A DNA stretch of 63,981 bases, counting the filler, from Octopus bimaculoides (Eukaryota): NCBI RefSeq assembly GCF_001194135.2. It is 5 parts of 5 records of this genome, joined end to end, with 100 filler letters (N's around TTAATTAATTAA, not from the genome) between each part and the next. Parts side by side here need not be neighbours in the genome. Positions count along the whole stretch, not along the records: positions 47,602 to 56,678 come from NC_068990.1; 4 more parts are not named here. One strand, 5' to 3'. Below the pieces are notes generated by a model, which made no database searches, was not told the DNA's origin, and saw nothing but the letters and a program-made list of their open reading frames with translations. The position numbers were made by a program, and so were the translations under genes. This document shows, piece by piece, positions 47,713 to 50,094 of this stretch (the stretch's first letter is position 1; each line of letters opens with the position of its first letter).

Positions 47713-48038
47713 CCTTTGTACTATAGATACAAGGCTTGAAATTTTGGGGTGAGGAGACTAGTCAATTACACCGACCCCAGTGTTTCACTGGTACTTAATT
47801 TATCGAGCTCGAAAGGGTGAAAGGCAAAGTCAACCTCGACGGCATTTGAACTCAGTTCCTAAAGGCGGATAAACCATCGCAAAGTATTTTGTCCTGATAC
47901 AGAAGGACTTAGTCACAAAAGCAACAGTTCTGATTACATCGACGCCAATAAATGGAGAGGTACTCTATTTTATTGACTTCCGAGGGATGAAAGACGAAAA
48001 ACAATGTTCACCTCGGTGGGATTTGAAGTCTAAACTTC

Positions 48039-48094
<56 letters not shown>

Positions 48095-49140
48095 GAGCAC
48101 CACAGCAAACCACAGCACATACCCAAGGCACACAGAGCTGCGCTCGGTAGTGAAGTGAAAGCACGTTATAAAATAAAACTACTGAACAATAATAATAATA
48201 ATAATAATAACAATAATAATAATAATGATAATAATGACGATAATAACGTTTTCAAATTTGGCAGAAGGTCAGCAATCTCATGGGTACGGGTAAAATCGGT
48301 AATATCGACCCCAGTGTTTGACTGGTACTTTTTCTATCGGCGCCGAAAGCATGAAAGACCAAATTGACATCGGTGACATTTGAATTCAGAACGTAAAAAC
48401 GGGCTAAATGCTTCTAAGCATTTAGCCCAACACGGTAACAATTCTGCTAGCTCGACGCCTTAGTAATTATAATGATAATCGAAAATAAAAGATAAAGATC
48501 AATTATGTTTCAACACAATACACTACACGACTTATCGCTAAGACTTCGATCAAGAAAGGTTTCGATTTAAAAGAATTATAAGAAAATGAATTTGCTGAGA
48601 CCAGATTGGATAAGCGTGGCGACCACCTATATTGATATTCCCTTAAATGGCCAATAGCTGTAGCGAAAGGCAGAAACCCTTTTTGATCTGGATCTACCAA
48701 ACAGATTTGAATGTTGCAGAAGTAACAATATTAGTGGTACAGAAGTAGGCCATTGTCACTAAATATATAGATTTCTAACAAGGCTAGCAATCCCGGGAGA
48801 GGGGATAAGTCAATTACATCAACCCCAATATTCAGCTGGGACTTATGTTATCGACCCCGAAACGATGAAAGGAAAATTCGACCTCGGCGGAATTTGAACT
48901 CAGAACGCAAAGACGGATGCAATGCCGCTAAACATTTTCCCCGGCGTGCTAATGATCCTGTCAGCTTCACATCTTTATCGCTATTAAATATATTAAGAGA
49001 ACAATGTACTATATGTTTTCAGTATATATCATTGTACCAGGTTGTTAGACGCTGTTTGATGTAACATACTCGGGTAGATGACAAATATGACCCGCGTGGT
49101 GTATATCTTGAGACATTTGGGTTTCCTTTATTACCCCGCT

Positions 49141-49564
49141 CTATTAATATCCAGTACCGCTGCCGTAGTCTCCTTTAGAGAGACTTAGAAATATTAATAT
49201 TTCTATTTTTGAAAACCAGTGGATGTATTCCACTGAATTTAAGTAAATAATCCTTCGTACAGACGGTCAGTAGCGACACCTGCTGGGTTCGGCTGCACTA
49301 CATTGATAAGAGGCAATACCTCGAAACTAGTCTGTAGATGCCAGACCAGCAAGGAGAAGCGGCTGACCTCCCCTGTTCGAAGGTTATAATGGACACAGAT
49401 TCGTGTGTCGCATAGCGAGCTAGAGGCGTTGGCCTCTTGGAGCGAATCAACGGCAGCATTCGTCCTATTTTTTGGACTGCCATGTTGGCTTGGCGATAAC
49501 TATTAATATCCAGTACCGCTGCCGTATTCTCCTTTAGAGAGACTTAGAAATATTTATATTTCTA
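49141..49564 (+). mobile_element. Candidate retrozyme: 359-nt structured unit with 65-bp terminal direct repeats and a hammerhead ribozyme
   Basis: 49141-49205 matches 49500-49564 at 63/65; many perfect stems; hammerhead at 49298-49337. Confidence 0.65.
49298..49337 (+). ncRNA. Minimal type I hammerhead ribozyme, U3-A8 core variant
   Basis: CUACA-UUGAUAA-GAGG(CAAUA)CCUC-GAAAC-UA-GUC/UGUAG: all three helices pair; predicted cut after 49332. Confidence 0.75.
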
Positions 49565-50094
49565 ACTTTTTCTTCTTTTCTACAAATTTCATACTTAACG
49601 ACCTAATAGTATCAGCGAACCTAATACTGATTGGACTCACTCGTGTAAGACACTACCTTGGAAAAATAATTCGATTACCCAAGCAAGTATATGAGTATAT
49701 ATGAGTATATGAGACTACTGTGTCCTCCCTCATTTTCTAAGACGATACTAATGTAGCTACAGGTAAACTGCTTACTATTTTTAGCACAGCATCATGAGTG
49801 ACTAACTCAAAGGCTTCCCCGTTGTTGGTGCCAGTTGTGATTTCAGTACTTAACCCATTAGTGCCCCAATCTTTTTTTATTCTTTATTACCAAAAGTCCT
49901 TTTTTTTTTGTACAAATTTATCTGATATTAGATATATAAAAAAAAAATTTTATTACAATATTTGAAAGACATTCCAGTTTTCATGACTAACTAAAGATAA
50001 CCCAGAAAAATACAGGTGTTGCAGAAATATAATGGATTAACCTTCTGGTTGTAAGAACAGGACCATGGGCGCTAATGGGTTACTGAAGATCTGT

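What the first reader, a model, noticed from the sequence alone, without database searches (positions are those of the whole stretch)
49141..49564. Candidate octopus retrozyme: 1.18 turns of a 359-nt rod-like RNA carrying a hammerhead
Seen: a 65-bp direct repeat (63/65 identical) with period 359 nt, no ORF and no obvious TSD. The hammerhead sits at the tip of a long interrupted rod: TGCTGG 49281-86 with CCAGCA 49346-51, GGTCAG 49265-70 with CTGACC 49363-68, ACAG 49259-62 with CTGT 49373-76, and CCTTCG 49252-57 with CGAAGG 49378-83. The rest also folds: CAGTGGA/TCCACTG 49217-35, GACACA/TGTGTC 49392-409, AGAGGC/GCCTCT 49422-37, ACGGCAGC 49450-57 with GCTGCCGT 49518-25, and a 20-bp palindrome at 49186-205. 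Known: animal non-LTR retrozymes are monomers of a few hundred nt with type I hammerheads that accumulate as circular RNAs. Inference: terminal redundancy that does not begin at the cleavage site is what reverse transcription slightly more than once around a circle would leave. I know of no description of this family in cephalopods but could not search.
Basis: partly seen in the sequence, partly recalled or inferred. Interest (0 to 1): 0.9.

Follow-up and report, generated by a model that had tools for sequence, protein, structure and literature searches.

The report
Dead hammerhead retrozyme copy, variant core
A 431-bp non-coding insert holds 1.2 copies of a 359-nt strongly folding unit with one hammerhead self-cleaving RNA motif like those in animal "retrozymes"; it looks like an immobile copy of a known kind of mobile element, possibly in an animal group where none has been described.

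Summary
The repeat 49141-49210 / 49500-49571 is real (63/65 identical, then a 2-nt indel and T5), with period 359. All quoted stems are at the stated coordinates, there is no ORF with homologues and no flanking TSD.

The hammerhead at 49297-49338 (+), which would cut after C49332, is well supported. A covariance model built only from four experimentally validated retrozyme hammerheads (coral, mussel, two axolotl) hits it at 25.6 bits (E about 7e-6). The next best hit in the piece scores 10.3 bits. Its architecture is the canonical metazoan type I: helix I of 5 bp, helix II of 4 bp, and a palindromic ACUAGU helix III.

Two caveats apply. The core is UUGAUAA (a U3-A8 pair instead of C3-G8, a covariation reported in Schistosoma PLE hammerheads). 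Rfam reports no hammerhead.

The fold is strong (z -6 to -7) but branched, not a simple rod. With a single hammerhead that needs a partner, this locus cannot release unit-length RNA, so it is a dead-end copy.

No second copy could be reached in any collection. Copy number, tandem arrays, circular RNA, the PLE partner and even the host species therefore remain untested. A rival reading, a 289-nt insert with a roughly 65-70-bp target duplication, is not excluded.

Verdict: probably a new member of a known kind. Interest is moderate to low.

The parts
49141..49571 (+). Whole insert: 1.2 unit lengths of a 359-nt non-coding unit (unit = 49141-49499)
   Evidence: Repeat spacing 359. Boundaries are sharp, with no homology of the flanks to the unit. 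Unit GC is 0.45 against 0.36-0.39 in the flanks.
49141..49210 (+). Upstream copy of the terminal direct repeat (certain core 49141-49205)
   Evidence: GC 0.31; folds into two hairpins, z -2.1.
49500..49571 (+). Downstream copy of the terminal direct repeat (certain core 49500-49564)
   Evidence: 63/65 identical to the upstream copy, then an AC indel and T5.
49297..49338 (+). Type I hammerhead ribozyme motif; predicted cleavage between C49332 and U49333
   Evidence: Model R1, built from 4 validated retrozyme hammerheads, scores 25.6 bits (E 6.8e-6) over the full model 1-44. It is the only descriptor hit in the piece. 20 Mb of Markov sequence gave 0 hits at this quality. Segment table.
49303..49309 (+). 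Core box UUGAUAA (consensus CUGANGA): U3 and A8 replace C3 and G8 and keep the 3-8 Watson-Crick pair
   Evidence: Read. U3-A8 covariation is reported in S. mansoni Cercyon PLE hammerheads (PMC4209133).
49310..49322 (+). Helix II GAGG/CCUC with 5-nt loop 2 CAAUA
49323..49332 (+). GAA box, then palindromic helix III segment ACUAGU (2 bp plus a 2-nt loop as a monomer; 6 bp between two copies), then C17
   Evidence: All four validated retrozyme hammerheads also have a palindromic AC...GU helix III segment. The dimer mechanism is described in PMC4209133 and PMC6155905.
49247..49387 (+). 141-nt interrupted hairpin arm with the hammerhead at its tip (stems CCUUCG/CGAAGG, ACAG/CUGU, GGUCAG/CUGACC, UGCUGG/CCAGCA, GGC/GCC, CUACA/UGUAG)
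   Evidence: The arm alone gives z -4.56.
49159..49166 (+). GCUGCCGU, 5' half of the 8-bp stem that closes the multi-branch fold of the unit (lies inside the terminal repeat)
   Evidence: An alternative local partner for its complement exists at about 49476-85.
49450..49457 (+). ACGGCAGC, 3' half of the closing stem
49167..49205 (+). Two hairpins inside the repeat: AGUCUC/GAGACU (49167-85) and the 20-nt AT palindrome (49186-205)
49217..49235 (+). Hairpin CAGUGGA/UCCACUG
   Evidence: z -4.7 for 49211-49246.
49392..49437 (+). Hairpins GACACA/UGUGUC (49392-409) and AGAGGC/GCCUCU (49422-37)

Best explanation
Positions 49141-49571 are an old, immobile genomic copy of a small non-coding retroelement of the animal 'non-LTR retrozyme' type. 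The unit is about 359 nt, strongly self-paired, and carries one type I hammerhead ribozyme (49297-49338).

Inferred life cycle of the family, none of it shown here:
1. Active members sit as tandem repeats and are transcribed as multimers.
2. Two hammerheads pair through their palindromic ACUAGU helix III segments to form a double hammerhead.
3. Each cuts after GUC (equivalent to 49332/49333), releasing 359-nt monomers with 5'-OH and 2',3'-cyclic phosphate ends.
4. The tRNA ligase RtcB closes these monomers into circles.
5. The reverse transcriptase/endonuclease of an autonomous Penelope-like element copies the circle or a multimer for slightly more than one unit and integrates the cDNA. This leaves the 65-72-nt terminal redundancy seen here.

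This locus has a single hammerhead, and its helix III is only 2 bp. It therefore cannot cut at two sites or work alone, and is a dead-end 'monomer' copy.

Shown here: the repeat, the motif, the fold, the absence of coding capacity and the sharp boundaries. Inferred: transcription, cleavage, circularisation, the PLE partner and the template form.
For: Hammerhead:
- A covariance model built only from the hammerheads of four retrozymes shown experimentally to self-cleave (sequences from Supplementary Table 2 of PMC7229834) matches 49297-49338 end to end at 25.6 bits, E 6.8e-6. The next best hit in the piece is 10.3 bits. Background in 33.7 kb of other loci is at most 12.3 bits, apart from three PLE hammerheads at 17.1 bits.
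- An independent descriptor scan finds this single site in 9 kb. It found 0 hits in 20 Mb of Markov sequence at the same stem quality and 5 at a lenient setting.
- The architecture equals that of the validated motifs and the published description of canonical metazoan type I hammerheads (PMC4209133).
- The two departures from consensus are mutually compensatory, keeping the 3-8 pair (pair existence: PMC3884650), and U3-A8 occurs naturally in PLE hammerheads.
- The two repeat copies differ at only 2 of 65 sites. Two specific substitutions after insertion are therefore unlikely (my estimate about 1e-4), so the template probably already carried U3-A8.

Element:
- Unit 359 nt, against 350-390 bp for mussel retrozymes and 170-400 nt overall.
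- GC 0.45, no ORF with homologues, and fold z -6.3 to -7.2 with unstructured flanks.
- The redundancy does not start at the cleavage site.
- A PLE fetched by chance (L003) shows the same insertion style: a 2678-nt unit with a 79-nt, 100% identical terminal redundancy.
- If the host is an octopus, active Penelope families are reported there (PMC13282606).
Against: - Only one copy was seen, so there is no family, no tandem array and no covariation among copies.
- Rfam 15 reports no hammerhead even at E<=10 on 501 nt.
- The core differs from consensus at two catalytically important positions, and activity is untested.
- Outside the hammerhead the unit has no similarity to the coral, mussel or axolotl retrozymes.
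- The repeated 70 nt has host-like GC (0.31) and only modest structure (z -2.1), so it could be duplicated target DNA.
- My descriptor was widened to U3-A8 after I had seen the sequence.
- The shortened calibration makes the model's E-value rough.
Confidence: 0.58

Rival explanations
1. Same kind of element with different anatomy. The mobile unit is the 289-nt segment 49211-49499 carrying the hammerhead. The 65-70-nt direct repeat is a long target-site duplication of host DNA made on integration, not terminal redundancy of the element.
For: - The repeat has GC 0.31, like the AT-rich flanks (0.36-0.39) and unlike the 0.49 of the unique part.
- PMC7229834 states that TSDs of animal retrozymes, when present, are larger than the 4 bp of plant ones.
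- There is no other TSD outside the repeat.
- The 8-bp stem linking the repeat to the unique part could arise by chance (my estimate: about 0.27 expected), and ACGGCAGC has an alternative local partner.
Against: - The AT-rich part continues 36 nt beyond the repeat (49211-49246, GC 0.33). The composition boundary therefore does not coincide with the repeat boundary.
- The repeat is itself folded (z -2.1, two hairpins) while the true flanks are not (z -0.8 and +0.4).
- The PLE in L003 shows that terminal redundancy of similar length (79 nt) is a normal product of this class of machinery.
Confidence: 0.17
2. Not an independent non-autonomous family. It is a fragment (solo pLTR/UTR or internally deleted copy) of an autonomous Penelope-like element of the same genome.
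For: - PLEs carry hammerheads in their terminal repeats and insert as partial tandems.
- U3-A8 cores have so far been reported in PLEs.
- Xenopus retrozymes are sister to PLE pLTRs.
Against: - There is no RT or GIY-YIG coding remnant in or next to the element.
- The hammerhead lies outside the repeated segment, whereas PLE hammerheads lie inside the pLTR.
- The motif is of the canonical type, with helix III and a 4-bp helix II. It is not the minimal PLE type, which has a long helix II and no helix III.
- The period is 359 nt.
Confidence: 0.1
3. No ribozyme element at all. It is a local partial duplication, or an unrelated structured repeat, in which a hammerhead-like string occurs by chance or as a decayed relic.
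For: - Rfam is negative.
- The core has two non-consensus bases.
- Only a single copy is seen.
- In a genome of a few Gb, the lenient descriptor would give on the order of a thousand chance hits (5 per 20 Mb).
Against: - 25.6 bits against an independent model, with 10-12 bits background.
- 0 hits per 20 Mb at the observed stem quality.
- The motif coincides with a 359-nt periodic, GC-enriched, non-coding, strongly folded insert, and sits exactly at the tip of its longest arm.
- The two core changes are compensatory.
Confidence: 0.1
4. A Pol III SINE (tRNA-derived or Sm-alpha-like) with internal A and B boxes.
For: GGTTCGGCTGC at 49286-96 resembles a B box with 2 mismatches.
Against: - That match is within chance: 16 were found against 8.2 expected, and it carries 2 mismatches.
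- No A box lies at a suitable distance.
- ARAGORN finds nothing tRNA-like.
- There is no A-rich or simple-repeat tail.
Confidence: 0.03

Closest known systems
Metazoan non-LTR retrozymes (Cervera & de la Pena 2020, PMC7229834), e.g. mussel Mg353, coral Amil224, axolotl Ax330/Ax353
   Same: - Unit size: 359 nt against 350-390 bp in the mussel.
- Non-coding, GC below 0.5, highly self-paired.
- One type I hammerhead per unit with a 4-bp helix II, a 5-6-nt loop 2, a palindromic AC..GU helix III and C17.
- Matched by a model built from their hammerheads.
   Different: - Only 1.2 units with one hammerhead, not a dimer-to-multimer array.
- U3-A8 core instead of C3-G8.
- No sequence similarity outside the hammerhead.
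- No expression or circularity data.
- The host clade (claimed cephalopod) is not among those described in the papers searched.
Hammerheads in pLTRs of Penelope-like elements (Cervera & de la Pena 2014, PMC4209133), including the U3-A8 variant of S. mansoni Cercyon
   Same: - Type I hammerhead.
- U3-A8 core covariation.
- Insertion as slightly more than one unit, with direct terminal repeats. L003 is an example: 79-nt redundancy on a 2678-nt unit.
   Different: - No RT/GIY-YIG ORF.
- The hammerhead is not inside the repeated segment.
- Canonical rather than minimal hammerhead architecture.
- No similarity to the non-coding ends of the L003 PLE.
Newt satellite 2 and Schistosoma Sm-alpha hammerhead repeats (about 330 nt), now counted among retrozymes
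   Same: Unit of about 330-360 nt with a type I hammerhead that works as a dimer through a short palindromic helix III. From memory, not tested: loop 2 CAAUA resembles the Schistosoma loop 2.
   Different: Those are high-copy tandem or dispersed families with demonstrated cleavage. Here there is a single copy with a variant core.
Plant LTR retrozymes (PMC4918200)
   Same: Non-autonomous, hammerhead-bearing, thought to spread through circular RNA.
   Different: Plant elements have type III hammerheads inside LTRs of about 350 bp, a PBS, a PPT, 4-bp TSDs and GC above 55%. None of these is present here.

Membership tests
Metazoan non-LTR retrozyme | Type I hammerhead motif with conserved core and canonical helices | tested here: met
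   R1 gives 25.6 bits over the full length. Descriptor hit. Segment table. Caveats: the core is UUGAUAA (a U3-A8 pair) and Rfam is negative.
Metazoan non-LTR retrozyme | Arranged as short tandem repeats (dimers to multimers), each unit with a hammerhead | tested here: not met
   This locus has 1.2 units and one hammerhead, with no eroded neighbours. Monomer derivatives of retrozyme families are reported, so this lowers the claim for the locus, not for the family.
Metazoan non-LTR retrozyme | Monomer of about 170-400 nt, non-coding, GC below 45-50%, no LTR/PBS/PPT | tested here: met
   359 nt, GC 0.45. ORFs are at most 61 aa and have no homologues. The repeat does not start TG or end CA, and no PBS-like site follows it (read).
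Metazoan non-LTR retrozyme | Highly self-paired RNA | tested here: met
   z -7.0 (linear) and -6.3 (circular); 61% of bases paired.
Metazoan non-LTR retrozyme | Many copies in the genome | not testable with these tools
   No cephalopod genome is in any collection. Two protein-database searches, one metagenome scan, two genome scans and four viral scans found no second copy.
Metazoan non-LTR retrozyme | Self-cleavage and accumulation as circular RNA | not testable with these tools
   Needs in vitro transcription, northern blots with RNase R, or RNA-seq.
Metazoan non-LTR retrozyme | Co-existence with autonomous PLEs in the same genome | not tested
   Literature only: 30 recently active Penelope families in O. 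vulgaris. The host of the window could not be identified.
Penelope-like element (pLTR or solo pLTR) | Direct repeats flank an ORF with RT and GIY-YIG endonuclease | tested here: not met
   There is no such ORF between or near the repeats. The only RT in the piece is a LINE-type RVT_1 fragment 6.7 kb away.
Penelope-like element (pLTR or solo pLTR) | Hammerhead lies inside the terminal repeat | tested here: not met
   The hammerhead at 49297-49338 is in the unique part, while the repeat is 49141-49210. Compare L003, where it lies inside the 79-nt repeat.
Penelope-like element (pLTR or solo pLTR) | Sequence identity to the terminus of an autonomous PLE of the host | not testable with these tools
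   No host PLE sequence is available. The unrelated PLE in L003 shows no similarity.
Plant LTR retrozyme | Type III hammerhead in each LTR, PBS, PPT, 4-bp TSD | tested here: not met
   Type I motif, single, outside the repeat; no TSD.
tRNA-derived SINE | Pol III A and B boxes or a tRNA-like head, plus a tail | tested here: not met
Rfam hammerhead families (type I/II/III, HH9, HH10) | Score reported by the curated covariance model | tested here: not met
   No hammerhead family was reported at E<=1 on 9 kb or E<=10 on 501 nt.

The most novel reading that the evidence does not exclude
Rfam and CUGANGA-based descriptors would miss such a family systematically. Retrozymes and their abundant circular RNAs would then have been overlooked in cephalopods, and possibly in other clades.
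Probability: 0.35. Interest if true: 0.5.

Novelty: new member of a known kind. Interest (0 to 1): 0.35.

Why it matters
If the family is confirmed genome-wide, three things follow.
- It would extend hammerhead retrozymes, and the small circular RNAs they produce, to a further molluscan class that has active Penelope-like elements.
- It would give a natural example of the 3-8 core pair covarying (U-A for C-G) in a canonical, tertiary-stabilised type I hammerhead.
- It would show that standard searches (Rfam, CUGANGA descriptors) under-count such elements.

The locus itself is a non-functional copy with no foreseeable effect on the host.

Tried and rejected
- Rfam 15 on the 9-kb piece (E<=1) and on 501 nt (E<=10) gave no hammerhead or any other ribozyme. 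The only hits were microsatellite-driven miRNA false positives.
- I looked for other copies through ORFs called in public assemblies, using the 61-aa ORF and the 86-aa stop-free frame. No candidates were found.
- A metagenome scan with a hammerhead pattern gave one unrelated hammerhead-like motif in L001. It shares no homology outside the core, scores 9.4 bits with R1, and Rfam does not call it.
- Exact scans of bacterial/archaeal genomes (2) and viral contigs (4) with four different segments gave 0 hits.
- I sampled related host DNA through the LINE RT fragment. The best relative is 91% identical at the protein level on a 717-bp ENA metagenome contig. Contigs L002-L006 hold no copy and do not identify the organism.
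- L003 and L004 were not available to my scripts, so I checked them with R1 and, for the PLE ends, by pasted sequence.
- Pol III boxes and tRNA-likeness were rejected.
- An LTR/TRIM reading was rejected: no TG..CA ends and no PBS.
- A search for a TSD outside the repeat found nothing, and so did a search for eroded extra units.
- MAFFT misaligned helix III in the 5-sequence alignment (A2), so I replaced it with an explicit segment table.
- Przybilski & Hammann 2007 on tolerance of 3-8 pair exchanges is not held in the library, and a search for C3U/G8A found nothing.

Full report
**Observation**

The segment 49141-49210 recurs at 49500-49571 with a start-to-start spacing of 359 nt (94% over 70-72 nt, BLAST E 7e-27). 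Base by base, 63 of the first 65 positions agree, followed by a 2-nt AC indel and a run of five T. The redundancy is therefore 65-72 nt, and the insert holds 1.18-1.20 units.

Nothing else in the 9-kb piece resembles the unit. Sensitive alignment of the 359 nt on either side to the unit gives scores at or below the shuffle mean. The boundaries are sharp, and this is not the stump of a decayed array.

The longest ORF is 61 aa and the longest stop-free frame is 86 aa; neither has any relative among 5.8 billion predicted proteins. No target-site duplication lies outside the repeat.

**Fold**

| Sequence folded | z-score |
|---|---|
| Unit, linear, + strand | -7.0 |
| Unit, linear, - strand | -7.2 |
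| Unit, circular | -6.3 |
| 141-nt arm 49247-49387 | -4.6 |
| Unique part 49211-49499 | -4.7 |
| Repeat alone | -2.1 |
| Upstream 200-nt flank | -0.8 |
| Downstream 200-nt flank | +0.4 |

The predicted shape is not a rod. An 8-bp stem (49159-66 with 49450-57) closes a multiloop. From that loop emerge one long interrupted arm with the hammerhead at its tip and five short hairpins. 'Rod-like' applies to the arm only.

GC is 0.45 for the unit: 0.31 in the repeat and 0.49 in the unique part, against 0.36-0.39 in the flanks.

**The hammerhead**

On the + strand the motif reads as follows:
- Helix I: CUACA (49298-302) pairs with UGUAG (49333-37). The A49297/A49338 pair beyond it is a mismatch.
- Core box: UUGAUAA (49303-09).
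- Helix II: GAGG/CCUC, with loop CAAUA (49310-22).
- GAA (49323-25).
- Helix III segment: ACUAGU (49326-31).

Against it, Rfam 15 reports no hammerhead even at E<=10 on a 501-nt search. The core also departs from CUGANGA at positions 3 and 8.

For it, I made three independent checks.

*First check: descriptor scan.* The descriptor required helix I, YUGANRA with a 3-8 pair, helix II, GAA, an A-U-closed helix III and a non-G at position 17. It finds exactly one site in the piece, this one. In 20 Mb of first-order Markov sequence it finds none at the observed stem quality and five at a lenient setting.

*Second check: covariance model.* The supplement of Cervera & de la Pena 2020 (PMC7229834) prints four retrozymes whose hammerheads were shown to self-cleave: coral Amil224, mussel Mg353, and axolotl Ax353 and Ax330. 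A covariance model built from those four hammerheads alone gave these results:

| Sequence searched | Best relevant hit |
|---|---|
| 9-kb piece | 49297-49338, full length, 25.6 bits, E 6.8e-6 (calibration is rough) |
| 9-kb piece, runner-up | 10.3 bits |
| 33.7 kb of unrelated loci, background | 12.3 bits or less |
| L003, three PLE hammerheads | 17.1 bits each |

*Third check: segment comparison.* A segment-by-segment table shows the same architecture as all four validated motifs: a 4-bp helix II, a 5-6-nt loop 2, a palindromic helix III segment beginning AC and ending GU, and C or A at position 17. This is the 'canonical' metazoan type I layout described in PMC4209133. It is not the minimal PLE type, which has a long helix II and no helix III.

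**The variant core**

C3 and G8 form a Watson-Crick pair in the active fold. Here both are changed, to U and A, so the pair is kept. The same U3-A8 covariation was reported in about 1,300 motifs related to Cercyon PLEs of Schistosoma mansoni.

The two copies of the terminal repeat differ at only 2 of 65 sites. Two particular substitutions arising after insertion are therefore improbable (my estimate is of the order of 1e-4). The template RNA most likely already had U3-A8. That is an inference, and activity of this core in this context is untested.

**What this locus can and cannot do**

As a monomer, helix III is 2 bp with a 2-nt loop. Such motifs are reported to cleave efficiently only when two copies pair through the palindrome to make a double hammerhead. 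The locus has one hammerhead and one cleavage site. Its own transcript could not excise a unit-length RNA.

It is best seen as a dead-end 'monomer' copy of the kind noted for vertebrate retrozyme families.

**Origin of the terminal redundancy**

The ends of the insert do not coincide with the cleavage site, so the template was not a linear self-cleaved monomer. Beyond that, several routes fit: reverse transcription for more than one turn around a circle, copying of a multimeric transcript, or the partial-tandem insertion typical of PLE machinery.

A contig fetched for another purpose illustrates the last route. L003 carries a PLE-like element with these features:
- A period of 2678 nt.
- A 79-nt, 100% identical terminal redundancy that contains a hammerhead.
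- An inverted second copy.
- A weak C-terminal GIY-YIG match.
- Insertion into (TA)n.

That is 1.03 units with a redundancy of similar absolute length to the one here.

A rival I cannot exclude is that the 65-70 nt are duplicated target DNA around a 289-nt insert. Its GC is host-like, and the stem joining it to the rest could be fortuitous. Against this rival, the AT-rich region extends 36 nt past the repeat, and the repeat is folded while the flanks are not.

**Relation to known families**

Functionally and architecturally the element matches animal non-LTR retrozymes. It fails the tandem-array criterion at this locus. The criteria of copy number, cleavage, circular RNA and a PLE partner could not be tested.

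It fails the tested criteria for a PLE pLTR: there is no RT/EN ORF, the hammerhead is outside the repeat, and the motif is canonical rather than minimal. Identity to a host PLE terminus could not be tested, and the L003 PLE ends show no similarity. It is neither a plant LTR retrozyme nor a Pol III SINE.

Outside the hammerhead it shares no sequence with the coral, mussel or axolotl elements. The hammerhead domain aligns to axolotl Ax330 at z 3.3 and shares GGCUGCAC just 5' of helix I. I treat that as a lead only.

**Limits**

No collection available here holds cephalopod genomes. Every attempt to find a second copy failed.

The host could not be identified. The nearest relative of the LINE RT fragment at the end of the piece is 91% identical, on a 717-bp metagenome contig.

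Full-text searches found no paper describing retrozymes or hammerheads in cephalopods. PLEs, including recently active Penelope families, are reported in Octopus.

If the host is an octopus, the 2/65 divergence of the repeats would suggest an insertion a few million years old on the calibration. With two events the error is very wide.

**Verdict**

The locus is most likely an immobile 1.2-unit copy of a hammerhead-bearing non-autonomous retroelement of the retrozyme type with a U3-A8 core (confidence about 0.6). It is a new member of a known kind, and interest is about 0.35. The decisive step is a simple genome-wide search for further copies.

Noticed in passing
L003 12758-15514 (+) and 3272-5662 (-) (ENA ERZ21867824 ctg96199l): A Penelope-like element. 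Its period is 2678 nt, with a 79-nt, 100% identical terminal redundancy that holds a hammerhead (R1 17.1 bits, three copies). It has a 99% identical inverted second copy, a Cys-rich motif plus a weak GIY-YIG match at the C-end of its second ORF, and it is inserted in (TA)n. It sits on both sides of a LINE whose RT is 64% identical to the one in the window.
   Followed up: partly
window 47729-47870, 48168-48397, 48778-48918: Three dispersed copies (71-76% identity) of a roughly 140-230-nt repeat, two of them next to (AAT)n runs. They look like a SINE family and are unrelated to the finding.
   Followed up: no
window 51388-51442 (+): A perfect Pol III A box (TGGCTTAGTGG) lies 44 nt upstream of a B box with one mismatch (GTTTCGATTCC), next to an assembly gap. 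This is probably the tRNA-derived head of a SINE, although ARAGORN calls no tRNA.
   Followed up: partly
window 56242-56678 (+): A LINE-type reverse transcriptase fragment (Pfam RVT_1 relatives) cut by the edge of the piece. It is 83.6% identical in DNA to a 717-bp ENA metagenome contig (L002). That suggests host DNA of a related animal in that metagenome.
   Followed up: partly
window 54646-54698 (-): A weak hammerhead-like string: CUGAUGA, a GGCU/AGCC hairpin and GAAA, scoring 10.3 bits (E 0.21) with R1. A 5-6-nt insertion before helix I and the missing UH site make it chance-level or a relic.
   Followed up: partly
window 53850-53896 and 53907-53953: Two identical 47-nt copies separated by exactly 10 N. 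This is probably an assembly gap artefact rather than biology.
   Followed up: no
L001 1804-1954 (-) (JAAUYA010262082.1): A CUGAUGA...GAAAC UAGUC string at the tip of a 58-bp, 95% inverted repeat. Neither Rfam nor R1 (9.4 bits) supports it as a hammerhead.
   Followed up: partly
window 49450-49483 (-): On the minus strand of the element, GUCC-AAAAAAUA-GGAC-GAA resembles a hammerhead helix II plus GAA box, but it lacks the CUGANGA box (R1 7.9 bits, E 1). There is no evidence for a minus-polarity ribozyme.
   Followed up: partly
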